This document shows, one piece after another, positions 41,171-63,628 of a stretch of DNA of 64,000 nucleotides (position 1 is its first letter; each line of letters starts with the position of its first letter). The notes beneath the pieces were generated by a model. The model made no database searches, was not told the DNA's origin, and saw only the letters and a list, made by a program, of their open reading frames with translations. The stretch is taken from positions 186,001-250,000 of the IMG/VR virus record IMGVR_UViG_3300021338_000003. The stretch is one strand, 5' to 3'. Position numbers and translations under genes: made by a program.

Positions 41171-44100
41171 ATGTCCGACAGCATTGAAGAGACCCCGGCA
41201 GCGAGCGAGAAGCTCGCGGGCCGGGAAAGCCGTATAGAAAAGCCGTCGACCATCGAAGCGATGCCCAAGACACAGCATCGTTTCCAGCTGCCCGGTTTTT
41301 TCACTCTCCCGGATGGGTCCGTCTACTACATCGAGAATGAGGTCGACCGACTGGAGGAATACCAGGCCGACGTTGACCAATTGCACGAGAACGAGCGGCT
41401 ATTTGAAGAAACCGGGGTTTTTCCTGGTTCTTACAAAAATCCCGGAGACATCCCGGAATATGAACGCTACGTCAAATGGGATACCGCTTTTAAGAAGGTG
41501 GAAAAGGAACTCATCCTTCGGAAAAGTCAACTCCCTCTAGGTAGCGCTGACCGTACTATCATCGATGCCGAATTGGACGCTTTCAGGGCGGCCATGAGAG
41601 CCAAGGAGCCCAAAGTCCGGTTTCGGCCCCGTCCCCGTGCGCCGCACACGGTATTTCGAGAGAAATGGTCAGTTGGTGACCTTCTCGCTATCAACCTCTC
41701 GGATCGCACCATCATGCGGACCATGGAGAAGGTGGACCGCATCAAGACTGAGGACATTACCGGCCTTGCTCCTCTATCAGATGAGGGCAAGGCCAAGATT
41801 ATGCTTGAGCCGTCGGTCTATATACCTCTCGATGTCTGCGGGTATACCAACACACTCCGACGGTCTGTGAAATTTCTCATTGATAACCCCGAGGGTCCCG
41901 AAGAGGCTCGAAACAGGGTCAAAGAAATCTTCTCTTCCTTCATCGCAGGATATGAGAGATTTGTCGACGCTATCTCTGTTCCAGCATATTACGAGTCTAT
42001 CAAAGACAAATCGTTGTATGACTTTGAAAAATCGTTCCGGACCCACTGGGACAATGTATTCGGAAGGTATGAAAGCGACCACCCCAGAATCAATAACATG
42101 GTAGAATGGGGTTTTACTAGTAGAGACGAAACTGCTGAAACCCATTGGCCAACGATCATCAAAACTGTCCAAGAAGGTCTAGACCTCTACCGTACATATC
42201 TCCCCCTATTCGTTGATGAGTTCTATACTTGGGTTCAGAAGCATGGCCTGCCCTGTCGGGCCCATGGGACTGAGATTGAAGGGTCCTGGGCAGCGGCTTT
42301 TGTTCAGTCCAGCCAGTTCCTCAGTCGTGCCAACGCTATGCATCACAACTCTTTCGAGGTACAGCGACGAAACCAGAGAAATGCCGAAAGGGCTGGACTT
42401 CAAGAGCCTATCTTGAAGGTTGCCATACGTCGAAACATGTATGGCAATTGGAAGAACTCGGTGCACATTGAGGAGATTGCGGACAAGATTGACGGCCCCG
42501 AGGTCGTTAACCGCGTGGCTGATGAGCGGCTTGCCTTCCAAACCGCTACCATTGACCAGATGCCCGAGGTTCCCCACCTCTCGAAGGATATCAAACTCTT
42601 CCCACACCAGGCGAAGACTGGTGCTCAACTAGACCAGAAGAACCGTGCTTTTGTGTCGGCCGTGATGGGTGCTGGTAAGACCAGTATGTTCTACTCGGAC
42701 GCAATGATTGCCATCAAGAACGGCAAGGCAAAACGTCCTGCTGTTGTAATGCCCACCAATACTGTGGAACAACAGGTTGATGAGCTGAAGCACAAGTTCG
42801 GCGATTACGTCAACATCATCGGTCTCACCAATCAGTCCTTTCGGAAGATGGGCAAGGGTGATGAGCGATTTGAGACTCTTAAGAAGCTCATCATTGAGGC
42901 TCCACCCAACACCATCGTGCTGGTGGCCTATGAGTGGCTGTCTCTGGAGCCCGAATCCTACGATACTGGCAAGACCCGGAAGAACAAGACTCCGATGATG
43001 GCCAAGCGATATACCCGCGGCACCTTCCTCACTGACGAGTGTGGTGTGGACATGGTCATCCTCGATGAATGTCACCGCATCAAGAACATCGATACTGCCC
43101 GGGCCAAGGCCACCATGGCTTTGTCCAGTGCCCCAGTCAAGCGGGTTGGGTCAGGTACCCTCTTTCCGAACACCCCTGATGATGTGGTCGGGCCGGCATC
43201 CTTTCTGGACCCCACCCTCTTCGGGTCTCACGAGGAATTCTGCAAGAGGTATAGCCTGGAAACCGTCCGTAGCAAGGTGGTGAGCTTCACCCCCGAGATG
43301 CTCAAGGAAGTCCGCAACGACCTCCTCGAATATGGTATGGTGAACATCCGTCGGACCGCTTGGATGCACATGATGCCCGACCGGACCGAGACCATCCACA
43401 CCACCCGTCTGAGCCCTCAGCTCCAGAAGCTCTACGAGGCTCTGTATAATGCCACCATTTCCAAGATCGAGGGTGACCCCGTCCTCTCCAAGTATTGGAA
43501 GGAGTTCGCTGAAGACGTCGGTGCCGAGGACCTCGACATCGACGAGAACGGATTCCTGCTGACCATCCTCGGTCGCATTGACCAATTCGTCTCTGCCCCC
43601 GACTCCAAAATGGGCGGCAACATTCAGGACCTCATTGATGAGGCGCAGAACGCAGAGACCGCCGAGGAGAAGAAAGCAGCCAAGGAAAAGCTCGATGGTA
43701 TGGGTGCCACCCTACTTCGAATCCGTGGTGCCATCGAGAACATGCCCGAGATGGACCGGGCCTCCCCCAAGGTGCGTAAGGCAGCTGAAATAATCGACAA
43801 GCACTTTGCCGACCCTTCCAATGTCCTCAAGACCGAAGATGGTCGGGAGTTCGAGGGTAAGGTTATTGTCTTCGTCTCCAATGTCGACACCGCGAAGCAC
43901 TTCCAGAAGTATCTCCCGATGCTTGCTAGCTCCGTGACCGAAGCCGAGATCGGTTTCTTCAAGGCTGACAGCAAGGGTCGCCGCGCTCTGGCCGAGTTCA
44001 AGGACCCTTTCAGTAACATGAAGGTTCTATGTGCTGTAGACGCTGGACTCCGTGAGGGACACAACCTTCAGGTGGCCAACCGGGTCATCCGTGGGTCTCT

Positions 44101-46393
44101 CCTCTGGACGCCCGGCGCCATGGAACAGACGTACGCCCGGGTATATCGCCCTGGAACTCTGGCCAACGAGGTCTTCATCGATATCATTGTCACGGAGAAC
44201 ACATTGGAGGTGGCCAAGTTCGGTCGTCTCCTCTCCAAGTATGATGCCATCCAACGCGTCAACTCCGAGTTTGAGGATGATTCCACCGAGGAACTCCCTC
44301 CGATCTCGATGAATATCAAGAACATCGAGACGTACACCAGCATGAGCATGTTGGACGAGTACATGGACCGGTACAACAAGGCGGCCGAATTCGACCTCGC
44401 CGAGTCCAAGAGACTCCAGGCTGAGTACGGGTCCGAGTTCATCGACCGGGCCGGTGGTCGTCTGCCTGGTGCTGATCTCATTACTGGGCTGCTTCCCTAT
44501 TATGATGAGGAGGACGCATATCGTCCGGTCAAGGTTCGGGTGATGGACCGCCAACTGGTGATATCCGACCCCGACAGCTTCGAGTGGCTCAACAAGCGAG
44601 TCTGCAAGAAGCTTGGCTTGAAGGAGGCCACCTCCAGCGGTCAGGTTGTGTACACCGGGAATCGACCCCTCGACATGGACGCCTGGGTAGAGACCGCCGA
44701 GACATTTGGCCTCGATGTTGCCCTGATTGAGGAATCCGGGTCCACCGCGGTCAAGATCAAGAAGGACGAAGTCACCAAGTCTTCGAAGCCGAAGAAGACC
44801 AAGGTGAAGATGAAGAGCCGCAAGAAGACGGGTCCGCTCAAGCTCCTGTGCGTCGGACCCGTGGGCAGTGGCATCCTGGCCATGTATGCCAAGAAGCAAC
44901 AAAAGGGTGATGGGTCGGAAACGTACCAGTATGTGATCGTCCATCATACTGATGGTGAGGTCGGGTCGGCCGCCCGTGGCGACCGCATTCACACCTTCCA
45001 CGCTCGGGGTAGGGGGTCTGGCCTTGCCAAGCTCACTGGTATCCAGTGGGATCATGTGCACAAGACCCTCTACGATGGGTTCGGTGAGGTCACCTGGTAC
45101 GCCCCTGGAGACGTCCCGGAGGTCCCTGATGTGGCTCCAGTGGTCGAAACCACCGTAGCACCTCTTCCGGCCAACGTCGTGCGCTCCTTGCGCTTCCTGC
45201 AGTATGATGGGGTCAAGTACCTCACCATTGACTCAGACGACGACCGCGCTCCTGACCTCCGGCCCCTCGGATTTGTGTGGTACAACGCGTTCTTCCAGCG
45301 TCCGTTCCAGACCATGAAGGATGCCCGGGTCATCATCGACCACCTGCAGCGAGTTGGTTTGGATATCGACGAGGATGATTTCTCGGACCACGCCCGGGAC
45401 GCCATCTGGAAGCGCAAGGTTCCGCAACGCAAGCTCCTCCGCGAACAGCTGCAGGAGATGCGCAAGCGGCGCCGGTCCCTCAAGAAGGGCAAGGTGTCCA
45501 TTCACTACGTCCAATACAAGGGTATGCATCACCTCGCTGTCAACGCTCTAGAACACCAGGACGATATCCGCAAAGTACGGGCTGTAGGCCGGTTTGGTCA
45601 GGTGACCTCCGGTTTCTGGATGCCCGTTCCTGGGAAGGCCGAAGTCCAGAAGGTGGTTCGCCAGCTGGAGAGCGCCGGTGTTAAGGTCGTCTATTGGGAG
45701 GAGTTCAAGACCCTCTGCTATGAGTGGTTCGGGTACAAGCCCACCGTCGACCTTTCGGTGCCCGAAGATGTCAAGGAGAAGCTCGAACTCCCCCGTGAGG
45801 ACCCGAGCCCTGCGCCATCTTCCCCCGAGGTCATCAAGGACACTCTCAAGAAGATCCGCAAGAAGCCTGCGAAGGGCCTATCTGATAAGAAGCTTGACAT
45901 CCTACGCCACACCTCGGGGTCGGATATCATCGGGTATGGCGGAGACACCCCCTTCAATATCGCGGTCATCCAGTCCCTCCTGAACAAGGGGTACATGGTC
46001 GGAACCCAGGAACGGGAACTCAAGCGGTACGTTGATGTCCAGCTCACCGAAAAGGGCAGGGAGGCTATCGGAGTGGATGATGAGACTCCGCCTGCTCCAA
46101 CCCCCGAGCCTACGTCGACACCTAAGGACGTCAAGGATGTATCCACCACTCCTCTGGATTGGAAGATGGTGGCCGACGAGCTTGACGACCCCTTTGAGCC
46201 CCGAGCCTTGTGGCGGTCGGTGGCCTCCGGTCGTCAGGTTTCTCTTGTCCTATTGGAGGACGACGAGACCTGGGAAGTCAAGCTGATGAGGCGGCATCCG
46301 GAAACCGGCAAGCGTCAGAGCAAAATCTTCCAGTTCACTGAAAAGGACTTGGCCCTCAGCAAGGTCCAGTCTCTCATCGGAGCCAGGTCATGA
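41171..46393 (+). CDS. Large SNF2-family helicase/ATPase with long N- and C-terminal extensions
   Basis: LFPHQ, VMGAGKT, ILDECHRIKN, SGTLFPN, KVIVF, EGHNLQ, WTPGAMEQTYARVYRPG. Confidence 0.88.
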   Translation: MSDSIEETPAASEKLAGRESRIEKPSTIEAMPKTQHRFQLPGFFTLPDGSVYYIENEVDRLEEYQADVDQLHENERLFEETGVFPGSYKNPGDIPEYERYVKWDTAFKKVEKELILRKSQLPLGSADRTIIDAELDAFRAAMRAKEPKVRFRPRPRAPHTVFREKWSVGDLLAINLSDRTIMRTMEKVDRIKTEDITGLAPLSDEGKAKIMLEPSVYIPLDVCGYTNTLRRSVKFLIDNPEGPEEARNRVKEIFSSFIAGYERFVDAISVPAYYESIKDKSLYDFEKSFRTHWDNVFGRYESDHPRINNMVEWGFTSRDETAETHWPTIIKTVQEGLDLYRTYLPLFVDEFYTWVQKHGLPCRAHGTEIEGSWAAAFVQSSQFLSRANAMHHNSFEVQRRNQRNAERAGLQEPILKVAIRRNMYGNWKNSVHIEEIADKIDGPEVVNRVADERLAFQTATIDQMPEVPHLSKDIKLFPHQAKTGAQLDQKNRAFVSAVMGAGKTSMFYSDAMIAIKNGKAKRPAVVMPTNTVEQQVDELKHKFGDYVNIIGLTNQSFRKMGKGDERFETLKKLIIEAPPNTIVLVAYEWLSLEPESYDTGKTRKNKTPMMAKRYTRGTFLTDECGVDMVILDECHRIKNIDTARAKATMALSSAPVKRVGSGTLFPNTPDDVVGPASFLDPTLFGSHEEFCKRYSLETVRSKVVSFTPEMLKEVRNDLLEYGMVNIRRTAWMHMMPDRTETIHTTRLSPQLQKLYEALYNATISKIEGDPVLSKYWKEFAEDVGAEDLDIDENGFLLTILGRIDQFVSAPDSKMGGNIQDLIDEAQNAETAEEKKAAKEKLDGMGATLLRIRGAIENMPEMDRASPKVRKAAEIIDKHFADPSNVLKTEDGREFEGKVIVFVSNVDTAKHFQKYLPMLASSVTEAEIGFFKADSKGRRALAEFKDPFSNMKVLCAVDAGLREGHNLQVANRVIRGSLLWTPGAMEQTYARVYRPGTLANEVFIDIIVTENTLEVAKFGRLLSKYDAIQRVNSEFEDDSTEELPPISMNIKNIETYTSMSMLDEYMDRYNKAAEFDLAESKRLQAEYGSEFIDRAGGRLPGADLITGLLPYYDEEDAYRPVKVRVMDRQLVISDPDSFEWLNKRVCKKLGLKEATSSGQVVYTGNRPLDMDAWVETAETFGLDVALIEESGSTAVKIKKDEVTKSSKPKKTKVKMKSRKKTGPLKLLCVGPVGSGILAMYAKKQQKGDGSETYQYVIVHHTDGEVGSAARGDRIHTFHARGRGSGLAKLTGIQWDHVHKTLYDGFGEVTWYAPGDVPEVPDVAPVVETTVAPLPANVVRSLRFLQYDGVKYLTIDSDDDRAPDLRPLGFVWYNAFFQRPFQTMKDARVIIDHLQRVGLDIDEDDFSDHARDAIWKRKVPQRKLLREQLQEMRKRRRSLKKGKVSIHYVQYKGMHHLAVNALEHQDDIRKVRAVGRFGQVTSGFWMPVPGKAEVQKVVRQLESAGVKVVYWEEFKTLCYEWFGYKPTVDLSVPEDVKEKLELPREDPSPAPSSPEVIKDTLKKIRKKPAKGLSDKKLDILRHTSGSDIIGYGGDTPFNIAVIQSLLNKGYMVGTQERELKRYVDVQLTEKGREAIGVDDETPPAPTPEPTSTPKDVKDVSTTPLDWKMVADELDDPFEPRALWRSVASGRQVSLVLLEDDETWEVKLMRRHPETGKRQSKIFQFTEKDLALSKVQSLIGARS

Positions 46394-51162: not shown

Positions 51163-51924
51163 TTGGCTGAAGTGTTGCCTATCACCGTGGAAAGCCTGTC
51201 CCAGGAGGCAGCCGATGAACAATTCGGTTCCTCTCCCGGTGGGATTCTTGATGACGAAGTAATTGCTGCCCTCAACGAGCGGCTGCCGGACGTGCAGGAA
51301 GAAAGGGAGGAGAGCCTCGGAAATGCCGAGTCTTCCGGTTCCTCTTTCTATAGCCGGCAGCCGTTCATCTTCACCCGAGTCGGTGAACAAGAAGCAGGAA
51401 TCTTCGTGTATGCGGCCCTGAATCCCACCGAAATTTCCTACACCATACCCACCCGAGAAGCACTAGAGAAATGTGGGGGTGGTGAGGTTAAGCACACTGC
51501 CCAGGCCAGTCTCGAAAGAGCCGAGAGTCTCGGCAAGTTTATTGATGAGATCGAGATTCGGTATACCCTCACTACTGGCAACGCTCTGCCCCTTCGATTC
51601 ACAGACGGTGGCTTGGGTATCCCGGATGGTCTCGACACCTTCTATGCCTTGATGGCTCTCCTCCTTGAGAGCGAACGAGTATTGGAGGATGGTCGTTCCA
51701 ACGATCTCATCATCAGCCAAAATTCGGTTACGTTTCCGATGATTACGGTTGAGGGCAAGCTCAAGCCCGAGGGGGTATCATTTGTCCAATCAGCGGATGA
51801 CCCCAACAAGATCTCCGGAATTTCTTTTTCGGTGTCAGTCCACAAGACTGTACCCCGTCTAACCTCGGTCGAGGCTCTCCGTGCCGCCTGGGAGAATTCG
51901 GCCGATAGAATCGGATCCTCCTGA
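51163..51924 (+). CDS. Putative tail/baseplate-associated protein
   Basis: GGAGGTGA SD, TTG start; acidic, beta-rich C-terminus. Confidence 0.5.
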   Translation: MAEVLPITVESLSQEAADEQFGSSPGGILDDEVIAALNERLPDVQEEREESLGNAESSGSSFYSRQPFIFTRVGEQEAGIFVYAALNPTEISYTIPTREALEKCGGGEVKHTAQASLERAESLGKFIDEIEIRYTLTTGNALPLRFTDGGLGIPDGLDTFYALMALLLESERVLEDGRSNDLIISQNSVTFPMITVEGKLKPEGVSFVQSADDPNKISGISFSVSVHKTVPRLTSVEALRAAWENSADRIGSS

Positions 51925-52829
51925 TGTGCTCTTGGATACGCAACCTTCTGGTCCAACCCCAGGACGACCCAACCACTGACTCCGTACCTCCAATCCCGCA
52001 GGCTCCGCAGGCCCTGCCTGACCCTCCCCCTAGTGCAACCCCCAATCCTGCTCCTTCTAGAGGACTGGAGATATCCGAGACAGCTGTAGATGGTACCAAA
52101 CCTCCTACTGAGGAAGAGACCATGCATCCGGTTCCAGAAGAGAAAAAGAAAGTCATAGACCAGGTCCTCAGTGTATTTGAGACCGGAAGCTCCGAGCCCT
52201 CCTACTCGAAGGTGGTGTTCCTCGATGACGGGGCTGGTATCACATACGGAAAGCATCAAAGCACCGATGGTGGCGGAGCCCTGGACCAAATAGTCATGAA
52301 ATATATAGACTATGGTGGAAAATATGCTGACGAGCTTCGACAGTACCTTCCTCTTCTAGCCGATGATGAAACCACCAAGGCTAACCCTGACGATCTCCCC
52401 AAATCGGTTAAGGAATTGATGAACCTTCTTCAGGCTGCGGGTGAGGACCCACTGATGCAAGCCGCCCAAGACAAAGTGTTCGACGAACATTATTGGGACC
52501 CAGCCATCAGCCAAGCATGGGATATGGGACTAACCCTCCCCCTATCTTGGCTAGTATGTTATGACAGTACAATCCACTCTGGATCCAACGGCATCGCCCG
52601 TATCAGAAAACGGTTCGCTGCCTTACCTCCGTCACGTGGTGGGGATGAGAAGAGATGGACCAAGGCTTATCTCGAAGCCAGGCGAGCTTGGTTGGCCAGT
52701 CATCCCAATCCGGTTGTTCAGAATACTGTGTACCGCATCGATTCCATGCTTCAGCTCATTGAGGATGATAACTGGATGCTCGACGTTCCTTTCATCCTCC
52801 TCAAGCCGAAGCGGATGATCAATGGGTGA
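51924..52829 (+). CDS. GH46 chitosanase-fold glycoside hydrolase, probable endolysin
   Basis: VLSVFETG (Glu), LDDGAGITYG (Asp), AQDKVFDEHYWDPA, YDSTIHSG; Pro-rich N-terminal linker. Confidence 0.8.
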   Translation: MCSWIRNLLVQPQDDPTTDSVPPIPQAPQALPDPPPSATPNPAPSRGLEISETAVDGTKPPTEEETMHPVPEEKKKVIDQVLSVFETGSSEPSYSKVVFLDDGAGITYGKHQSTDGGGALDQIVMKYIDYGGKYADELRQYLPLLADDETTKANPDDLPKSVKELMNLLQAAGEDPLMQAAQDKVFDEHYWDPAISQAWDMGLTLPLSWLVCYDSTIHSGSNGIARIRKRFAALPPSRGGDEKRWTKAYLEARRAWLASHPNPVVQNTVYRIDSMLQLIEDDNWMLDVPFILLKPKRMING

Positions 52830-53340
52830 CGACTACACCATGCGTGATGTGAGAACTTTTGCACAGCTTGCCCATGGCGACCAGCTGTATGCTGAAAGGT
52901 TTCCTTTTGTGATGCACCTGGACCAGGTCTTCTGGACTCTTAAGAAATTCGGGTGCGAGGATACCTTGATCCACAGGGCTGCTTTTCTGCACGATGTAGT
53001 CGAGGATACCCACGTTCAACTGGACGAGGTCCATGACTCTTTCGGCACCGATATGGCCAGGCTGGTCCATGGCGTGACTATGCCCGAAGAGATGAGCCGT
53101 CTTGAAGCAGTATCCGTTGTTGCCGACCATATGAAATTTGACAGCCAAATACAGACCCTCAAACTGGCTGACCGCATTTCAAACGTCCAACTAGCTGTAT
53201 GGGAAGGCAACAAGAGAATCATGCGGTTCTACGCCCGGGAACACCACATCTTCAAACGAGCCCACACCGCCGGGCAAAGTATGGACCACATGTGGTCATT
53301 TCTAGATGACATGCTGAAGCCTTGGACCAAAAAGGACTAA
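52822..53340 (+). CDS. HD-domain protein, RelA/SpoT/Mesh1-like (p)ppGpp hydrolase family
   Basis: AHGDQLY..FVMHL..AAFLHDVVEDT..LKLADRISN. Confidence 0.82.
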   Translation: MGDDYTMRDVRTFAQLAHGDQLYAERFPFVMHLDQVFWTLKKFGCEDTLIHRAAFLHDVVEDTHVQLDEVHDSFGTDMARLVHGVTMPEEMSRLEAVSVVADHMKFDSQIQTLKLADRISNVQLAVWEGNKRIMRFYAREHHIFKRAHTAGQSMDHMWSFLDDMLKPWTKKD

Positions 53341-53999: not shown

Positions 54000-54323
54000 T
54001 TATTTCTCCTTAGGGCAGGATAGATGCCCGCCTATCTTGGCTATAGATACACCACCACAGCGACCGTTGAACAGATGGTCGGTCACTTTCTTGTTGGTGG
54101 CTTCTGTATCCAACTCAGACAGCAATTCCCCAGTCTCCACATACCGCCAGGTCCAAACGCTATCTGAATCCCGCTGAATTGGAATGCCATCTAAGTACGC
54201 CCGGTCAAAGTCAGTTGGGTCAACCTTGAAAGTGCGTATCCACCTCCGGAGGACCCACACGAGAGGCTGCAAAGCACTGGCTGTTACCATCAAAACCCCA
54301 ACGAACAGACAGAGATCCATCAT
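54000..54323 (-). CDS. Hypothetical membrane-anchored protein
   Basis: N-terminal hydrophobic helix. Confidence 0.55.
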   Translation of the reverse strand: MMDLCLFVGVLMVTASALQPLVWVLRRWIRTFKVDPTDFDRAYLDGIPIQRDSDSVWTWRYVETGELLSELDTEATNKKVTDHLFNGRCGGVSIAKIGGHLSCPKEK

Positions 54324-55285
54324 GCCACCTTCAACTTTTTGATTTTGACTGGCTTAGCCCCAAAACTTGCACACTTGGCCCGGAGCTTCTTGACCCAAGA
54401 GATAGGAGCGTCACCTGGGTCCTTTTTGGCCGGGGCAGCAAACTCAATGAGGTCAATTTGGCCCTCAAGCTCAGACTTGGCCGCATCCCACAGGGCCTCC
54501 CCACCGTGGTCCCCATCCCCAGCGACGATTATATGCCTAAGCCCAGACCGCATAAGTAGGGAATCAGTCTTGGCAGCTGACCATGTCTCGGCTCCCATGA
54601 CCGCCACGGCTGGAATTCCGTACCGCAAAAGACGGAGGGCATCAAAGGGACCCTCGGTGATGACCAAAACTGGTCCCTTTGAGATGCGATCCAGCATGAA
54701 CCACATTGTATCGGTGGGAAGGTCCTTGGACGTCAGCCACTTTGGGTCTCCATCCTTTTCTACCGTACGGGCAGTGTACCCCACCATCTCGTTTTCATGA
54801 GTAATGATGAACATAGCCCGCCGACCGCCCCTGCGATCACGCATCCTACGGGCACCAATCCGAGTCATGAAGGACTCTGGTAGTCCACGCCACGGCCCCT
54901 TCCACGGGGAAGTGTTTCGCGGGATCGTGAATTCCTCGACGTCAGCAAAATTCACGTTATCCATGGACTGAAACCGACGCTTGATATAGGACCGGCCATC
55001 AATCCCAGGTCCATCAGACTTCAGTTTGGGAAGGCCCACCTTGACCGCGTAGTCATTAAAATCAGATTCATGGTTGCACCTGTGGCACTTGATCTTGCGA
55101 CCACCCCGATGAATCCACAAAGACTTGGAAGTGCTATTGTGAAACGGACAGCGAACGTAGAAGAAACTTCCTTCCTTTTTGACTCGGTAGTCGATACCGA
55201 AAGTGTCGAGGAGGGACCGAATCTTGATGCCGGTTTCGTAGTCAGAACCTCGATGGCCCTCGGCGTGGCTGCGGTCAGTAGCCAT
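54320..55285 (-). CDS. DnaG-like primase (CHC2 Zn finger + TOPRIM)
   Basis: RCPFH..KCHRC, ITEGPFDAL, VAGDGDHGG; GGAG SD. Confidence 0.82.
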   Translation of the reverse strand: MATDRSHAEGHRGSDYETGIKIRSLLDTFGIDYRVKKEGSFFYVRCPFHNSTSKSLWIHRGGRKIKCHRCNHESDFNDYAVKVGLPKLKSDGPGIDGRSYIKRRFQSMDNVNFADVEEFTIPRNTSPWKGPWRGLPESFMTRIGARRMRDRRGGRRAMFIITHENEMVGYTARTVEKDGDPKWLTSKDLPTDTMWFMLDRISKGPVLVITEGPFDALRLLRYGIPAVAVMGAETWSAAKTDSLLMRSGLRHIIVAGDGDHGGEALWDAAKSELEGQIDLIEFAAPAKKDPGDAPISWVKKLRAKCASFGAKPVKIKKLKVA

Positions 55286-56297
55286 GCTTAAGTCGCTCCG
55301 TAGTCGTATCTTTTCTCTGTTCGAGCCTGTAATCGACCAGAAGGTATCGCTTGAAGTTCCTCATAGGGCTGAAATCCGAGCCTCCTCTCTACCATTCTGC
55401 TACAGGGATATTGCCCTTACCGCTTGGGCCAAAAAAGGGAACCGGTGCCCCACCAAGGAATGGTCCCTCGGGGCCACTCTTTACACAGACATCGGAACCG
55501 CGGTTCACGCCTCTATCCAAAGGTATCTGGGCGGGGCTGGGTTCCTCTGGGGGTCATGGAAGTGCAATCACTGCGGGAAAGTCTACCTGAACCAGACCTC
55601 TCCTGGTGTCTGCTGCGAAGACCTGGTCGAGTACGTTGAATATTCCCTGGTTCATCCCAACCCCGAAATTGGAGAATTCGGGCACTGCGATGGTATCATC
55701 GTCCTCCCTCATAAGATGGGGTGGTTCGAATTGGAAATCAAGACGACTGGTCAGTCATTGGCTGCCAAGAGGAAGGAGCAGGGCCCGGCCGAGGAGCATC
55801 AACAGCAGGTGGGTATATACCACGAGATGTTTGATGCTGGATACGCTCGGGTCAGGGAGCGAGGACGCCCGGAACCTGGAGAGAGGCATGGACCTATCCT
55901 CATCGATGAGAAAGCCAAGATGCCACCAGGCCCTCACCTCAAGGTGGTTCTAGTCATCTACGTCCTTCGCGACAAACCCAAACCCCGCTACTGGATTCCT
56001 CTAGTCCGTCGCCCGCGACTGGGTGGTCTAGCCGATATCGAAAAGAATGTGCCCCGGGTCAAAAAGGCAATCCGAATTGGCACTTTGCCCCCTGGCACAT
56101 GCAAAAAATACGACGATGCCAAGAACCCCTACAACTTCCGAGAGGTCTGTCCCTGGGCCAGAGAGGTCTGCTTCAACAAGACCGAGAGTCCCAAGTCGGC
56201 AGGTCGCCGAGTGTTCTTGTGGTCCAAGACCCCCCACAAAACAAAGAGAAAGGTAGACTTGAGCAAATCCTTCATCAAGAGGAAGAGTGATCGATAG
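55284..56297 (+). CDS. PD-(D/E)XK (Cas4/RecB-like) exonuclease
   Basis: RASSLPFCYR, GTAVH, GHCDG, ELEIKTT, QQVGIY, C-terminal C..CP....C. Confidence 0.78.
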   Translation: MLKSLRSRIFSLFEPVIDQKVSLEVPHRAEIRASSLPFCYRDIALTAWAKKGNRCPTKEWSLGATLYTDIGTAVHASIQRYLGGAGFLWGSWKCNHCGKVYLNQTSPGVCCEDLVEYVEYSLVHPNPEIGEFGHCDGIIVLPHKMGWFELEIKTTGQSLAAKRKEQGPAEEHQQQVGIYHEMFDAGYARVRERGRPEPGERHGPILIDEKAKMPPGPHLKVVLVIYVLRDKPKPRYWIPLVRRPRLGGLADIEKNVPRVKKAIRIGTLPPGTCKKYDDAKNPYNFREVCPWAREVCFNKTESPKSAGRRVFLWSKTPHKTKRKVDLSKSFIKRKSDR

Positions 56298-56448: not shown

Positions 56449-58650
56449 ATGAACCACGCACCTTCGTCTGACGCCGGAATCGAAGAGGTTCAACCGATTT
56501 CAGTGGAAGAGCACAAGGTTCAATTTCCAAACGCCCTGTCTCAATTCGTCTTCACTCGAACTTACCCTCGCTGGAGAGAGGAAGACCAGCGCCGTGAGAC
56601 TTTCGAGGAATCGGTTGAGCGCTATGTGACGTTCATCAAGGAAGAAAGGCCCAAAGTTCCCGCCGAGGTTCTGACCGAAATCAAGAACGCCTTGTTGTCC
56701 ATGGAAGTGGCCCCGTCAATGCGCGCCTTCTGGAGTGCCGGACCGGCCGCCAAACGTGACAACACAATGTTCTACAATTGTTCTTTCATTCCCTTGGATT
56801 GCTTGCCCAGCTTTGGTGAGCTTCTATATGTTCTGATGATGGGCACTGGGGTTGGATACTCGGTTGAATCCAAATTCGTCAACAACCTCCCTACTGTGGC
56901 GAAGCCTATAGACGTTCCCCCTGAGTATATGGTGATACCAGATACCACCAAGGGATGGATGGATGCTCTCACCAAGGGTATGACTGCCTGGTACCAGGGC
57001 AGAGACATAACCTTCGACTTTTCGAAGATTCGCGAGGCTGGTGCCCGTCTCAAGACCAAGGGTGGTCGTGCCTCCGGTCCCCAACCACTCAAGAATCTCC
57101 TCAATTTCACCAAGAAGGTCATTCAGGGTGCCATCGGCCGGAAGCTCTTCACCGTCGAGTGCAACGATATTGCCTGCATGGTTGGCGAAATTGTTGTGGC
57201 ATCCGGTGTTCGCCGTTCTGCTCTTATCTCCTTCTCTGATCCGACCGACAACAAAATGCGGGATGCCAAGAAGTTCCCCATCTGCCAGGAATGCGGATTC
57301 GGATATGCCACGCATCTCTCCCAGGTCACTAATGAGATAGGCGTGGTTGTCACAGACCACGAGAAGGCCCACCTCATGGAGGAGCATGGAATGACCGAGG
57401 CCGAGTATCTGGAGAAACATCCGGATGCCTACCTTGGGTTTGGGATGCACCGGTTCCTAGCCAACAATTCAGCATTCTGGTCCGAAAAGCCGAGCCGGGA
57501 TATCTTCGATACTGAGTGGAAGGCCCTTCGTGATTCTGGGTCCGGCGAGCGTGGATTCTACTTCTTGCCCCCGGCCAAGGTAGCAGAGCGCGGTACCGCC
57601 GATATGAGGTCCAACCCATGTGGTGAAATTCTCCTCCGCTACGCCATGGCTACGAACCCCTGGACGGGTGAAGGCGGTGGTGGTCAATTCTGCAACCTCA
57701 GCGCGGCCATCATGCGCCCATGGGACACCGTCGACACCATGGCCAAGAAGGTATACATCGCCACCTGGATTGGGGCCATCCAGTCTACCTTCATTGATTT
57801 CCCACACCTTCGCCCGGCCTGGAGAAAGCACTGCGAAGAGGACCGCCTGCTTGGCGTGGATATCACTGGCCATTGCGATAACCCGGCTCTATCCACCGAC
57901 GAATTCGCCATGAAGGCCCTCAACACAATTGCCAACTCCACCGCCAGTATAGCCTCGGGTATCCTGGGAATCAACGAACCGAAGAGTGTTACCTGTGGAA
58001 AGCCCTCAGGTAACAGCAGCCAGTTGTTCGACTGCGCCTCTGGGTTCCATACCCGCTACGCTCCCTATTACATCCGACGCGTTCGGGTGTCGGCTACCGA
58101 CCCCCTGTTCCAGCTGATCCGGGACTCTGGTGTCCCCGTCCATAAGGACAACAAGTATCAGTCCTGGAACGACGCCGATTGCCCAACCTGGGTTGCTGAG
58201 TTCCCGGTCAAATCCCCGGAAGGTGCCATGACCCGGGACGACGAAGGAGCGATCGGTCAGCTCAACCGATACCTCCAGGTGATGAGAACCTGGATATCTA
58301 CCCGAGGGCACAACCAGTCTGCTACCGTCTACGTCCGTGACCATGAGTGGGATGAGGTTGGTGACTGGTTGTTCGAGAATTGGAACCACGTCACGGGTCT
58401 ATCCTTCCTACCCTATGATGGCGGAAAGTACAGTCTGGCTCCTTACGAGGCTATCACCAAAGAGCAGTACGAAGCCCTGGTCAAGGACTTCCCAGATGTG
58501 GACTACAACCTCCTCCAATTCTATGAGAAGGAAGACATGGGGCAAGGCAGTCAAGAGCTTGCCTGTGTCGGCGGGAGCTGCGAGGTCGATTGGTCAATCG
58601 GTGACGAACCTCCTCCCCTGGACGATATAGACGCTCTCGAAAGCAAGTAA
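56449..58650 (+). CDS. nrdJ: Class II (adenosylcobalamin) ribonucleotide reductase with 60-aa insertion
   Basis: TRTY, PSMR, YNCSF, GTGVGYS, GVRRSA, ANNS, SNPCGEI, FCNL, KPSGNSS, HNQS, C-terminal ACVGGSCE. Confidence 0.88.
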   Translation: MNHAPSSDAGIEEVQPISVEEHKVQFPNALSQFVFTRTYPRWREEDQRRETFEESVERYVTFIKEERPKVPAEVLTEIKNALLSMEVAPSMRAFWSAGPAAKRDNTMFYNCSFIPLDCLPSFGELLYVLMMGTGVGYSVESKFVNNLPTVAKPIDVPPEYMVIPDTTKGWMDALTKGMTAWYQGRDITFDFSKIREAGARLKTKGGRASGPQPLKNLLNFTKKVIQGAIGRKLFTVECNDIACMVGEIVVASGVRRSALISFSDPTDNKMRDAKKFPICQECGFGYATHLSQVTNEIGVVVTDHEKAHLMEEHGMTEAEYLEKHPDAYLGFGMHRFLANNSAFWSEKPSRDIFDTEWKALRDSGSGERGFYFLPPAKVAERGTADMRSNPCGEILLRYAMATNPWTGEGGGGQFCNLSAAIMRPWDTVDTMAKKVYIATWIGAIQSTFIDFPHLRPAWRKHCEEDRLLGVDITGHCDNPALSTDEFAMKALNTIANSTASIASGILGINEPKSVTCGKPSGNSSQLFDCASGFHTRYAPYYIRRVRVSATDPLFQLIRDSGVPVHKDNKYQSWNDADCPTWVAEFPVKSPEGAMTRDDEGAIGQLNRYLQVMRTWISTRGHNQSATVYVRDHEWDEVGDWLFENWNHVTGLSFLPYDGGKYSLAPYEAITKEQYEALVKDFPDVDYNLLQFYEKEDMGQGSQELACVGGSCEVDWSIGDEPPPLDDIDALESK

Positions 58651-61962: not shown

Positions 61963-62301
61963 ATGAGCAAGATGAATGGCTTTGGGGTAGCATTTGAGTC
62001 CGAAGGCGACTTCTACGGTATGGAGGGGGCCATCCAGGAGATGCAAAGTGCCACTTGCGGTGCTATCTTCGATGGGCGCGGGGAACTCATAGTCGTTACA
62101 AACGACGAGCGATGCAGCCTAGAAGACTTCATCTCGGAATACGGCAGGATGTATGGCGAGAGCTATGCCCCCAGCAAAAAAGAAGTGGTGAAGACACATA
62201 ACGTGACCGGAGACGTCACTGCCACGAGCAAGATGGATGAAATTGTGGCGAAGTACAAGAACGAAATCACGGCGGCGGGGGACATTCGTTTGAAGGACTA
62301 G
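61963..62301 (+). CDS. Hypothetical protein with leader motif at its C-terminus
   Basis: AGGAGG SD; ends VTATSKMDEIVAKYKNEITAAGDIRLKD. Confidence 0.65.
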   Translation: MSKMNGFGVAFESEGDFYGMEGAIQEMQSATCGAIFDGRGELIVVTNDERCSLEDFISEYGRMYGESYAPSKKEVVKTHNVTGDVTATSKMDEIVAKYKNEITAAGDIRLKD

Positions 62302-63323
62302 ACCAGCCCTCGGGCAATATCAACGGCTCGGTTGGCCTTCTCTTCATCGAATCCGACCCTCTCCTGCAGCCACCTTCCGAGGCCAGTGAGAGGGTCATTT
62401 GTCTCAATCTTCTGTACCTCAGCCTTCGGCATCTTTCGGGGCGTGCTCCGCACGAGGTCACCTCGCCAGGACCTCATGGCCTCGATGTTGGAGGTCTTCA
62501 AGTGCACCCAAGAATCCGTCTCGACCTGCTCCAGGTCCTTCGGGTCGTCAGTCTCCAGGGCTACAAGCTTCTTGACCTTAGGATGATTGTTCTTAATGAG
62601 CTTCGGCCTGGTAGGGTGGTCGAGGTCCACCAGCAGGACTCCCTTGTTCGGAAGCTCCGAGAACTTGTGCTGGGCTGGAGACCCCGGATACCAGGCGTTC
62701 TTGAGGCCAGACAGGGGCTGACGCTTGTGAATATCCCCCATGGCCCAGTATGTCACCCGGTCATTCTTCTTGATGCGGACACCCTTCCGAGCCTTCCACC
62801 CCGAGTCATCAGTAACCCCAGCCACCATCTCATGACCGACAACCACGACGGGGTTATCACCCTCCACTTTGCGAATCAGACGATCGACCATCCGGCCATA
62901 CCCGGTATCATCCTCGGTGCAAGGTACCAGAACGAACGTGCATCGGGGCATGTGGAGGATGCGGGGCTTGGTCTCCGTGAAGAAGACATGCGGCAACCTC
63001 TTGTCCCTTTGGAGGATGGCAAGGTTGTGGAGGTTGGTATACCCGGATTCCAGTTCGTCGTGATTCCCCGGAATGATGACAATCGGGCGCTCGTCATACT
63101 TGAGCAGAGCCTCAAGGAAAATGTCCCTCACCTTGGGGTGGGGGTCCTTGTGGTCATATATGTCACCAGCAATCACTACATAATCGACATTCTTCTTCCG
63201 GGCCGTAGTGAAGATGAACTCCAGTATACCCTTGTACCGGTCAAGCTTCCACTGAAAGGGGACATCCAATCGGCGAAGTGCTCCCAGGTGAATATCTGCA
63301 GTGTGAAGCAATCGAACGCCCAT
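62298..63323 (-). CDS. SbcD/Mre11-like (T4 gp47-like) metallophosphoesterase nuclease
   Basis: HTADIHLG, AGDIYD, PGNHD, GHE, GDIH, YPGSP; ATG 63323 after GAGG. Confidence 0.85.
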   Translation of the reverse strand: MGVRLLHTADIHLGALRRLDVPFQWKLDRYKGILEFIFTTARKKNVDYVVIAGDIYDHKDPHPKVRDIFLEALLKYDERPIVIIPGNHDELESGYTNLHNLAILQRDKRLPHVFFTETKPRILHMPRCTFVLVPCTEDDTGYGRMVDRLIRKVEGDNPVVVVGHEMVAGVTDDSGWKARKGVRIKKNDRVTYWAMGDIHKRQPLSGLKNAWYPGSPAQHKFSELPNKGVLLVDLDHPTRPKLIKNNHPKVKKLVALETDDPKDLEQVETDSWVHLKTSNIEAMRSWRGDLVRSTPRKMPKAEVQKIETNDPLTGLGRWLQERVGFDEEKANRAVDIARGLV

Positions 63324-63628
63324 CAGACCTTCCTCTTTTTCTTTCGCCGCCATATCTGATATTCACGGGCGGTCATTTCTGGAACAGGACGAATTGCTTC
63401 TGGCTCGGCCATGCACTGATTTTTGTGCCTCTCTGGAGGGACATAGACAGTATGGGTACCAAGGCACTCCTCTCCCTCGTGCATGTGAATGTCAAACACG
63501 TTGTCGAGGTCCGGAGTGGGAGACGCTCCAAGTTCTTTCTCCCTCTTACCCTCCTCGACTGCTCTGGCCTCAGGAAAGGTCTTCACCATCTTGTTACAGT
63601 GCGGGCACAGGTGTCTAGCCACGGTCAT
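63323..63628 (-). CDS. Small Zn-binding protein
   Basis: CPHC..H...EC..TH; start uncertain. Confidence 0.5.
   Translation of the reverse strand: MTVARHLCPHCNKMVKTFPEARAVEEGKREKELGASPTPDLDNVFDIHMHEGEECLGTHTVYVPPERHKNQCMAEPEAIRPVPEMTAREYQIWRRKKKRKV

What the first reader, a model, noticed from the sequence alone, without database searches (positions are those of the whole stretch)
57271..57450. Ros/MucR-like C2H2 zinc finger inserted into class II ribonucleotide reductase
Seen: between MRDAK and RFLANNS lies KFPICQECGFGYATHL..HEKAHLMEEHGMTEAEYLEKHPDAYLGFGMH (60 aa). From recollection, related NrdJ have only about 10 residues here. CxxC..HL..HGMT..EY..K resembles Ros/MucR-type fingers. There are no intein termini. 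Inference: an RNR with a DNA-binding or protein-docking finger, possibly tethering dNTP synthesis to phage DNA or autoregulating.
Basis: partly seen in the sequence, partly recalled or inferred. Interest (0 to 1): 0.6.

Follow-up and report, generated by a model that had tools for sequence, protein, structure and literature searches.

The report
Ros-type zinc finger inside phage RNR
A jumbo phage's B12-dependent ribonucleotide reductase carries a small Ros/MucR-type zinc finger spliced in frame into a surface loop next to its substrate and specificity loops; the same cassette occurs patchily in related phage enzymes and comes from a finger family otherwise found mostly in mobile nucleases, but what it does in the enzyme is not yet known.

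Summary
The ORF at window 56449-58650 (+) encodes a 733-aa monomeric class II (RTPR-like) ribonucleotide reductase with its catalytic residues intact. Residues 275-334 (57271-57450) replace an 11-residue loop that 82 of 106 aligned relatives have. Twenty-seven of the 120 nearest homologues carry a homologous 35-61-aa insert at this site, and all 27 keep Cys, Cys, His, His. A profile of the inserts finds Ros87 (PDB 2JSP) as its best PDB match. A fold search that does not use sequence also ranks 2JSP first, weakly. An exhaustive profile search finds hundreds of non-RNR proteins with 2-17 copies of the same module. Most of them match Pfam ROS_MUCR, and several are fused to homing-type nucleases. 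So the Ros/MucR-type reading holds for the finger module, but not for the regulator family. The insert lies about 20 residues after loop 2, in the loop that class I papers call loop 3. It is not an intein. Its distribution on the RNR tree is patchy (one clade rejected, p = 6e-34). RNR fingers are acidic, unlike the mostly basic non-RNR copies, so DNA tethering is unlikely. I read it as a domesticated, rigidly mounted zinc module with a docking or gating role. That function is inferred, not shown.

The parts
56449..58650 (+). Gene for a 733-aa monomeric class II (RTPR/NrdJm-like) ribonucleotide reductase, the host of the insert
   Evidence: ORF. phrog_367 scores 1.7e-133. TIGR02505 scores 230.7 bits, below its 340 cut-off. 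PF21995 and PF17975 pass their cut-offs. PDB 1L1L matches by sequence at 3.4e-31 and by fold at 5.4e-35, TM 0.68. The AF2 model has mean pLDDT 85.6.
57271..57450 (+). The in-frame insert, K275-H334. The Ros/MucR-type C2H2 finger module is about F276-A327. RNR-specific junctions are KKFP (274-277) and YLGF (328-331).
   Evidence: alignment A1. pLDDT in the full-length model is 84-92 outside the variable loop. Ros87 is the top hit by profile and by fold.
57283..57294 (+). Cx2C knuckle: C279 and C282, the predicted zinc ligands 1 and 2
   Evidence: C279 is invariant. C282 is present in 26 of 27; the exception has Cx4C. The pair aligns to Ros87 C24/C27 (= Ros C79/C82). Ligand roles in Ros are from PMC9779718.
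57319..57369 (+). Variable loop S291-A307 between the knuckle and helix 1. About 16 residues are specific to this phage, and the loop is predicted disordered.
   Evidence: This loop is 0-16 residues in the other inserts. pLDDT is below 50 for residues 294-305.
57370..57387 (+). Helix 1, HLMEEH: H308 and H313 (Hx4H), the predicted zinc ligands 3 and 4
   Evidence: Both His are invariant in 27 of 27. DSSP gives a helix at 308-313. The pair aligns to Ros87 H37/H42.
57397..57417 (+). Helix 2, TEAEYLE, the counterpart of the Ros TPEEYREKW helix
   Evidence: DSSP gives a helix at 317-323. Y320 is invariant.
57193..57222 (+). RNR loop 2 (V249-A258, VVASGVRRSA), the specificity loop. It lies about 20 residues upstream of the insert.
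   Evidence: T. maritima K202/Q203 lie in VVKQGSRRR. The RRxA motif is shared. pLDDT is below 50 at 251-254. The mapping is by motif and spacing, so it is inferred.
57454..57456 (+). F336, the position outside the insert most tightly linked to its presence
   Evidence: F in 88% of insert-bearing RNRs; Y in 98% of insert-less ones.
57619..57621 (+). C391 in NPCGE, the thiyl-radical cysteine. Together with C111 (56779-56781), C415 (57691-57693) and the C-terminal pair C706/C711 (58564-58581), it shows the enzyme's catalytic set is intact.
   Evidence: These columns are invariant or nearly invariant in 106 homologues. They align to RTPR SNPCGEI and CEGGAC.

Best explanation
The insert is a zinc-stabilised finger of the prokaryotic Ros/MucR C2H2 type: a Cx2C knuckle, a variable loop, a helix carrying Hx4H, and a second T-x-E-E-Y helix. 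It replaces the short loop between the helix after strand C and strand D of the RNR barrel. Class I papers call that loop loop 3; it lies beside the specificity loop 2 and lines the substrate pocket. The module belongs to a large pool of Ros-type fingers that otherwise occur singly or in tandem arrays, often fused to homing-type nucleases. It was captured once by a phage NrdJm gene. Since then it has been swapped in and out between RNR lineages by recombination across the conserved flanks AK...R[FY]MANNS. In the RNR it has been kept under purifying selection as a rigidly mounted, acidic surface domain on an otherwise intact enzyme. My reading is that it no longer binds DNA. It most likely acts at the protein level, either as a docking knob for a partner or as an extra wall or gate beside the substrate and specificity loops. 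Shown here: its presence, homology, ligand conservation, patchy distribution, charge shift, and intact catalytic residues. Inferred: zinc binding, the loop 3 position (from motif spacing, not superposition), and the function.
For: Identity of the finger:
- Ros87 is the top PDB hit of the insert profile, E = 0.0014, with ligands in register.
- ROS_MUCR is the Pfam family hit by most inserts, 17 of 27.
- 2JSP is first of 48,161 chains in a fold search that does not use sequence.
- The finger profile finds 530 proteins. Of 104 scanned, 95 match ROS_MUCR at E <= 0.001. Nine of 10 scanned singly exceed the Pfam cut-off.

Selection and mounting:
- C, C, H, H are kept in 27 of 27 inserts.
- Insert identity is 57% against 69% for the rest of the protein over all pairs, and 85.5% against 85.3% within one clade.
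- The finger core is confidently modelled in context.
- Conserved aromatic junctions KKFP and AYLGF, and the coupled Y-to-F336 change, suggest a rigid mount.

Mobility:
- The tree needs at least 5 changes of state, and one clade of insert-bearers is rejected at p = 6e-34.
- P0009 and P0032 share a unique Cx26-27C variant, yet the backbone rejects them as sisters, p = 0.0027.
- Syntenic phages differ only by the cassette.
- Co-occurring domains in non-RNR finger proteins are NUMOD3, HNH, Vsr, LAGLIDADG_2 and DUF559.

Not DNA binding: RNR fingers carry -3.1 net charge per 40 aa against +2.1 in 454 non-RNR modules, p = 2e-14.

Enzyme intact: catalytic residues are invariant and the fold matches 1L1L.

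Position.
Against: - No single RNR insert reaches the Pfam ROS_MUCR cut-off. The window's own scores 11.9 bits against 25.4.
- The structural match is weak (Z 2.7, rmsd 3.5 A over 51 residues), and Foldseek found nothing.
- The isolated model has a pLDDT of only 71.
- I had no model coordinates. The distance of the finger from the substrate and effector sites, and whether it packs on the body, were not measured.
- No partner protein was identified. No distant RNR column co-varies strongly with the insert, so there is no positive evidence for a docking or gating role.
- Conserved ligands are also expected for a functionless passenger that merely must fold.
Confidence: 0.5

Rival explanations
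1. Passenger or relic of a mobile element. The finger would be a leftover DNA-binding module of a homing-type nuclease that landed in frame in a tolerant surface loop. It would have no role in the enzyme. It would persist because an unfolded insert would harm an essential protein, and perhaps because it disrupts a nuclease target site. It would spread or vanish by recombination between co-infecting phages.
For: - The finger family is associated with nucleases (NUMOD3, HNH, Vsr, LAGLIDADG_2, DUF559).
- A related jumbo phage has a multi-finger protein with a nuclease-like tail (L007).
- The distribution is patchy and the cassette is exchanged.
- This RNR family is heavily parasitised by inteins: 14 of 120 homologues.
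- Loop lengths inside the finger vary freely.
- No co-evolving distal surface was found.
Against: - The insert evolves about as slowly as the rest of the enzyme.
- The consistent shift to negative charge in all RNR lineages suggests adaptation rather than mere tolerance.
- The junction motifs are conserved.
- The insert shows no compositional anomaly and no flanking repeats.
- No nuclease sits in or beside the insert in the window, and the window's genome has no other copy of the finger.
Confidence: 0.25
2. DNA-binding tether or autoregulator. The finger would bind phage DNA like Ros/MucR, localising dNTP synthesis at replication sites or repressing the enzyme's own gene.
For: - The finger is homologous to a bona fide DNA-binding fold.
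- The same module in nuclease fusions presumably binds DNA.
- The gene sits among replication genes: a DnaG-like primase, a Cas4-like exonuclease and an SNF2 helicase.
Against: - RNR fingers are acidic: mean -3.9 net charge, range -11 to +2. They lie at the acidic extreme of the family.
- They lack the basic flanks that stabilise Ros-DNA binding and the N-terminal oligomerisation domain that MucR uses (PMC9779718).
- The junctions look rigid rather than linker-like.
Confidence: 0.12
3. Intein, intron read-through, or assembly artefact.
For: RNR genes often carry inteins, and 14 homologues here do.
Against: - There is no Hint or endonuclease domain and there are no splice-junction residues.
- The inteins in homologues sit at C111, C391 and C415, not at this site.
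- The insert is in frame, and homologous versions occur in 27 separate protein clusters from several sources.
Confidence: 0.01

Closest known systems
Ros87, the DNA-binding domain of Agrobacterium tumefaciens Ros (PDB 2JSP; Pfam PF05443 ROS_MUCR)
   Same: Both have Cx2C on a hairpin, Hx4H on the first helix, and a following T-P/x-E-E-Y helix. Ros87 is the top profile hit (E = 0.0014) and the top fold hit. Both have a larger two-helix fold than eukaryotic C2H2 fingers.
   Different: The Cys-to-His spacer is 10-25 or more residues here, against 9 in Ros. The RNR finger has no N-terminal oligomerisation domain and no basic flanks, and it is acidic. It is embedded inside an enzyme rather than being a free regulator. 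It occurs in phages rather than alpha-proteobacteria. No single insert reaches the Pfam cut-off.
Lactobacillus leichmannii ribonucleoside-triphosphate reductase (PDB 1L1L), the monomeric class II RNR
   Same: The overall fold matches (Foldseek 5.4e-35). Both have the loop 1 insertion domain, the catalytic NPCGE, two redox cysteines and a C-terminal CxxxxC tail.
   Different: RTPR has a 12-residue loop (KQDQEKLMHHRW) where this enzyme has the 60-residue finger. Identity is only about 22%.
C-terminal Cys4 zinc finger of class II RNRs (Loderer et al. 2017, PMC5704485; Burnim et al. 2022, PMC9669993)
   Same: Both are zinc-binding modules attached to a B12-dependent RNR.
   Different: The known finger is Cys4 and sits at the C-terminus. 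It is mostly found in dimeric enzymes and positions the reducing cysteine pair. The finger here is Cys2His2 and internal, in loop 3 of a monomeric enzyme that keeps a plain C-terminal Cys pair. Monomeric class II RNRs are currently described as not needing zinc (PMC12918982).
Modular DNA-binding fingers of homing-type nucleases, and in-frame insertion elements in phage enzymes (for example the ShiLan domain in a phage methylase, PMC11855218)
   Same: The same finger family is found fused to NUMOD3, HNH, Vsr, LAGLIDADG and DUF559 domains. Both are in-frame inserts in an essential phage enzyme, with a patchy distribution on the host-gene tree.
   Different: There is no nuclease domain in or next to the RNR insert. 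The RNR insert is only 35-61 residues long and is acidified.
Inteins in RNR genes
   Same: Both are in-frame insertions in conserved parts of phage RNR genes. Inteins are present in 14 of the 120 homologues.
   Different: The inteins sit immediately before the catalytic cysteines (C111, C391, C415) and carry Hint and endonuclease domains. The finger has neither and is not expected to splice.

Membership tests
Ros/MucR prokaryotic zinc finger (Pfam PF05443) | Cys2His2 ligand set with Cx2C and Hx4H | tested here: met
   C279, C282, H308 and H313. The four ligands are kept in 27 of 27 inserts, with one Cx4C variant. They are in register with Ros87 C24/C27/H37/H42.
Ros/MucR prokaryotic zinc finger (Pfam PF05443) | 9-residue spacer between the second Cys and the first His | tested here: not met
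   The spacer is 10 residues in the shortest inserts, 25 in the window's protein, and variable elsewhere.
Ros/MucR prokaryotic zinc finger (Pfam PF05443) | Score above the Pfam gathering cut-off (25.4 bits) | tested here: not met
   The window's insert scores 11.9 bits, E = 0.23. The best of the 27 inserts reaches E = 0.0031.
Ros/MucR prokaryotic zinc finger (Pfam PF05443) | Homology to the finger module shown by profile and by intermediate sequences | tested here: met
   The insert profile hits 2JSP as the top PDB match, E = 0.0014. The finger profile retrieves 530 proteins. Of 104 scanned, 95 match ROS_MUCR at E <= 0.001, and 9 of 10 scanned singly exceed the cut-off.
Ros/MucR prokaryotic zinc finger (Pfam PF05443) | beta-beta-beta-alpha-alpha globular fold of about 58 residues | tested here: inconclusive
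   AF2 gives short strands plus two helices (308-313, 317-323), with pLDDT 84-92 in context. 2JSP is the top VIA-align hit, but only at Z 2.7, rmsd 3.5 A over 51 residues. Foldseek found nothing.
Ros/MucR prokaryotic zinc finger (Pfam PF05443) | N-terminal oligomerisation domain and basic flanks needed for DNA binding | tested here: not met
   The finger is flanked directly by RNR sequence. Net charge averages -3.9, or -3.1 per 40 aa against +2.1 in non-RNR modules. The requirement is from PMC9779718.
Ros/MucR prokaryotic zinc finger (Pfam PF05443) | Binds one structural Zn(II) | not testable with these tools
   Inferred only, from the invariant ligands.
Monomeric class II RNR (RTPR/NrdJm) | RNR ten-stranded barrel with the loop 1 insertion domain that mimics the dimer interface | tested here: met
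   1L1L is the top fold hit, 5.4e-35, TM 0.68-0.70. PF21995 RNR-II_ins_dom scores 32.2 bits against a 27 cut-off.
Monomeric class II RNR (RTPR/NrdJm) | NCBIfam TIGR02505 equivalog cut-off | tested here: not met
   230.7 bits against 340.05. The protein is a divergent phage branch; phrog_367 scores 1.7e-133.
Monomeric class II RNR (RTPR/NrdJm) | Catalytic Cys/Asn/Glu, the redox Cys pair and the C-terminal Cys pair | tested here: met
   N389, C391, E393, C111 and C415 are invariant. C706 and C711 are nearly invariant. All align to their RTPR counterparts.
Monomeric class II RNR (RTPR/NrdJm) | Adenosylcobalamin dependence and NTP substrates | not testable with these tools
   Inferred from homology only.
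Intein | Hint domain, N-terminal Cys/Ser, C-terminal His-Asn followed by Cys/Ser/Thr | tested here: not met
   No intein domain was found in P0002. The junctions are AKK|FP and GMH|RF. True inteins in homologues lie at other sites.

The most novel reading that the evidence does not exclude
The finger is an active functional handle, not a decoration. It would either recruit the reductase to the phage replication machinery or to another finger-bearing enzyme; in a related jumbo phage a CobS/MoxR-like AAA+ ATPase carries the same acidic finger. Or it would re-wire substrate and effector control by sitting on loop 3. In addition, it would be a self-contained domain cassette that moves between RNR alleles of co-infecting phages, which would be a new way for an essential enzyme to gain and lose a regulatory module.
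Probability: 0.12. Interest if true: 0.8.

Novelty: new variant of a known kind. Interest (0 to 1): 0.55.

Why it matters
Monomeric class II RNRs are the commonest RNRs of marine viruses and are currently described as needing no zinc (PMC12918982). A subset with an internal Cys2His2 finger would add a zinc requirement and a new structural element beside the loops that set substrate choice. The case also shows a Ros/MucR-type finger outside alpha-proteobacterial regulators. The family is thought of as H-NS-like silencers, yet here the module appears in phage enzymes, in nuclease fusions and in tandem arrays of up to 17 copies. Sister phages with and without the cassette (P0009 and P0024) give a natural pair for testing what a domain insertion next to an allosteric loop does to an enzyme.

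Tried and rejected
- **Loop 2 placement.** I first placed the insert in loop 2. I rejected this after the T. maritima alignment showed that K202/Q203 lie in VVKQGSRRR, before the RRxA strand. The insert is in the next connection, loop 3.
- **Intein or artefact.** Rejected.
- **Foldseek on the isolated insert model.** No match at E <= 0.001.
- **PHROGs scan of the fingers.** Only scattered hits at E >= 0.012 to unnamed families.
- **tblastn of an insert plus flanks against 50,697 GenBank phage records.** No match.
- **IMG/VR pattern scan.** Only two further loci.
- **Recombinant tract around the insert.** Sliding-window identity showed none. Nearest-neighbour identity within the finger gave too little signal to build a finger tree.
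- **Distal RNR columns co-varying with the insert.** Only the adjacent F336 stands out.
- **Conserved neighbour gene.** The upstream 337-aa ORF in the window is unrelated to the 334-aa upstream ORF of the related phages.
- **Composition and repeats at the insert borders.** Nothing unusual.
- **Other fingers in the window's genome.** Neither the finger profile (other than the RNR) nor ROS_MUCR matches elsewhere. It also has no homologue of the finger-bearing AAA+ or nuclease-like proteins of phage G002.
- **Complex prediction.** Not used, because I have no specific partner to claim.
Full report
**The observation**

The window lies at 186001-250000 of a 250,817-bp IMG/VR virus record rated 91% complete, which is a jumbo phage. 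A single ORF at 56449-58650 (+) encodes 733 residues.

The protein is a monomeric class II ribonucleotide reductase of the RTPR type:
- phrog_367 scores 1.7e-133.
- TIGR02505 scores 230.7 bits, below its equivalog cut-off.
- The Pfam RNR-II insertion domain and the RNR alpha domain pass their cut-offs.
- The only PDB sequence relative is L. leichmannii RTPR, 1L1L.
- A full-length AlphaFold model (mean pLDDT 85.6, pTM 0.87) finds 1L1L as its top fold match at 5.4e-35.

The catalytic set is present and invariant in 106 homologues: N389, C391 and E393 in NPCGE, C111, C415, and the C-terminal pair C706/C711. The enzyme therefore looks functional.

**Is the insert unusual?**

The word search returned 120 homologues at 51-69% identity. 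Between the conserved FSDP and SAFW motifs, 93 have 34 residues with the loop AKDWSRGxFPxCRYMANNS. Twenty-seven have 64-95 residues, and the window's protein has 84. L. leichmannii RTPR also has the short form, so the short loop is ancestral and the insert is derived.

The 27 inserts are homologous. Their consensus is KFPxCxxCGxGWxNHL...GHLxxxHGMTEExYLxKHPxAYLGF. One Cys, both His, one Tyr and the GF are invariant. The second Cys is present in 26, and the exception has Cx4C. Two loops inside the module vary freely in length:
- Between the cysteines there are 2 residues, or 26-27 in two sequences.
- Between the knuckle and the His helix there are 0-16 extra residues.

The window's protein has the longest version of the second loop. 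It is modelled as disordered, with pLDDT below 50 for residues 294-305.

No GenBank phage record matches an insert with its flanks. Sources annotate these proteins only as RNR.

**What the insert is**

Four lines of evidence agree.
1. A profile of the inserts searched against all PDB sequences finds Ros87 (2JSP) first, at E = 0.0014. The Cx2C, the Hx4H and the T-x-E-E-Y helix are all in register.
2. Scanned singly against Pfam, 17 of 27 inserts hit ROS_MUCR, more than any other family. All are below the cut-off (best E = 0.0031; the window's own scores 11.9 bits).
3. VIA-align 2 compared the isolated insert model (pLDDT 71) with 48,161 representative chains without using sequence. Only two chains reached Z >= 2, and the first was again 2JSP (Z 2.7, rmsd 3.5 A over 51 residues). 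The score is weak in absolute terms, and Foldseek found nothing.
4. An exhaustive HMMER search of 1.84 billion representatives with a finger-only profile found 530 proteins at E <= 0.001. None of the best 150 is an RNR. They carry 2-17 copies of the same module.
   - Of 104 scanned, 95 match ROS_MUCR at E <= 0.001, the best at 2.5e-93.
   - Nine of ten scanned singly exceed the Pfam cut-off.

These intermediates tie the RNR insert firmly to the Ros/MucR finger module.

The features that define Ros/MucR regulators are different and are not met. Those features are an N-terminal oligomerisation domain, basic flanks that stabilise DNA binding, and a 9-residue Cys-His spacer (PMC9779718). The correct statement is therefore "a Ros/MucR-type finger module", not "a Ros/MucR protein".

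**Where it sits**

I first assumed the site was loop 2. That was wrong. T. maritima K202 and Q203, the effector-proximal loop 2 residues (PMC3267527), lie in VVKQGSRRR just before the RRGA strand. The equivalent here is VVASGVRRSA, residues 249-258, whose centre is modelled with low confidence, as expected for a mobile loop.

The finger lies in the next connection. That connection runs from strand 259-263, through a short helix at 268-271, then the finger, then helix 333-337, to strand 338-344.

In a class Ib NrdE study, loop 2 is residues 225-232 and loop 3 is residues 254-261. Lys263 of loop 3 is able to occlude the substrate pocket (bioRxiv 10.64898/2025.12.21.695763). Setting R230 equal to R255 here places loop 3 on the DWSRGxFPxCR loop that the finger replaces.

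This mapping rests on motif spacing and barrel topology, not on a superposition. I had no access to model coordinates.

The junctions KKFP and AYLGF are conserved and aromatic. The one outside column tightly coupled to the insert is the adjacent F336: F in 88% of sequences with the insert, Y in 98% without. This suggests a rigid mount rather than a flexible tether.

**Evolution**

I built a maximum-likelihood tree of 106 RNRs with the insert columns removed.
- The insert needs at least five changes of state on this tree.
- The AU test rejects a single clade of insert-bearers (delta lnL 383, p = 6e-34).
- P0009 and P0032 are the only two with the Cx26-27C variant. The backbone rejects them as sisters (p = 0.0027).
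- P0009 (with the finger) and P0024 (without) are 80% identical and lie in syntenic contigs. They differ exactly between AK and R[FY]MANNS.

A simple deletion of the finger would not recreate the conserved short loop. Replacement by recombination across the conserved flanks, in either direction, is therefore the simplest account. That is an inference.

No long recombinant tract is visible, and the finger is too short for a tree of its own. The insert has the same G+C content as the gene and has no flanking repeats.

This RNR family is also heavily colonised by inteins, in 14 of the 120 homologues. Those inteins sit only at the three catalytic cysteines.

The non-RNR finger proteins often carry NUMOD3, HNH, Vsr, LAGLIDADG_2, DUF559 or TnsA-like domains. 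The module therefore belongs to the mobile-nuclease toolkit.

**Function**

The insert evolves about as slowly as the rest of the enzyme: 57% against 69% identity over all pairs, and 85.5% against 85.3% within one clade. It is therefore under constraint.

Its electrostatics have shifted. RNR fingers carry -3.1 net charge per 40 residues, against +2.1 for 454 non-RNR modules (Mann-Whitney p = 2e-14). They lie below the fifth percentile of the family. This argues against the DNA-tether or autoregulator idea, though it does not exclude it.

In the window's genome the RNR finger is the only copy. In a related 288-kb phage the same acidic type of finger also heads a CobS/MoxR-like AAA+ ATPase, and a multi-finger protein with a nuclease-like tail is present.

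I therefore favour a domesticated, zinc-stabilised protein-level module, either a docking knob or an added wall beside the substrate and specificity loops. A functionless passenger is the main rival. Nothing here shows the function directly.

**Novelty**

RNR insertions are a studied topic. Neither the survey of RNR insertions and extensions (PMC9669993), nor the class II zinc-finger paper (PMC5704485, seen only in the search listing), nor a search combining MucR, RNR and NrdJ turned up an internal Cys2His2 finger. A recent virioplankton study describes monomeric class II RNRs as not needing zinc (PMC12918982). I rate this a new variant of a known kind, of moderate interest.

**Limits**
- No coordinates were available.
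- The groups for the AU tests were defined by the trait. However, the first test was run after the tree had been seen.

Noticed in passing
L006:436-1671 (-), in related 288-kb phage record G002: A 411-aa protein with an N-terminal acidic Ros-type finger (HLMEAHGLTVADYL; ROS_MUCR 25.2 bits) fused to an AAA_5 (CobS/MoxR-like) ATPase. It is a second enzyme in that phage carrying the RNR-like finger. The window's genome has no homologue.
   Followed up: partly
L007:232-1740 (-), in G002: A 502-aa protein with at least three Ros-type fingers and a C-terminal tail (FDGYFP..IVEFHGHQH) that looks to me like a Vsr/DUF559-type nuclease. It resembles a free-standing homing-type endonuclease. Pfam confirmed only ROS_MUCR (36.9 bits).
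   Followed up: partly
Proteins P0122-P0131 and others (not in the window): Unannotated proteins of 600-1350 aa hold 9-17 tandem Ros/MucR-type finger modules, and they pass the ROS_MUCR cut-off. The family is usually described as single-finger alpha-proteobacterial regulators. The origin and role of these arrays are unknown.
   Followed up: no
Homologues P0022, P0029, P0030, P0037, P0041, P0051, P0063, P0076, P0102, P0109, P0110, P0117, P0119: Inteins of 269-452 aa are inserted immediately before the three catalytic cysteines (equivalents of C111, C391, C415). One protein has two inteins. P0037, P0041 and P0102 carry both an intein and the finger.
   Followed up: yes
window 41171-46393 (+): A 1740-aa ORF with an SNF2/DEAD-type helicase core occupying only residues about 475-995. 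The large flanking regions have no Pfam match.
   Followed up: no
window 51924-52829 (+) and 52822-53340 (+): A glycoside hydrolase family 46 (chitosanase-like) protein (5e-24), an uncommon family for a phage lysis or wall-degrading enzyme. An HD-type phosphohydrolase follows it with overlapping ends.
   Followed up: no
window 54320-55285 (-) and 55284-56297 (+): A divergently arranged DnaG-like primase (Toprim plus CHC2 zinc ribbon) and a Cas4/RecB-like exonuclease (phrog_1706, 7.6e-19) lie directly upstream of the RNR. A calcineurin-like phosphoesterase lies at 62298-63353 (-). No tRNA genes were found in the 64 kb.
   Followed up: partly
window 57319-57369 (+), P0002 residues 291-307: A roughly 16-residue extension inside the finger (SQVTNEIGVVVTDHEK) is unique to this phage among the 27 inserts and is modelled as disordered. 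Together with the 26-27-residue loop between the cysteines in P0009 and P0032, it shows the finger itself tolerates nested insertions.
   Followed up: partly
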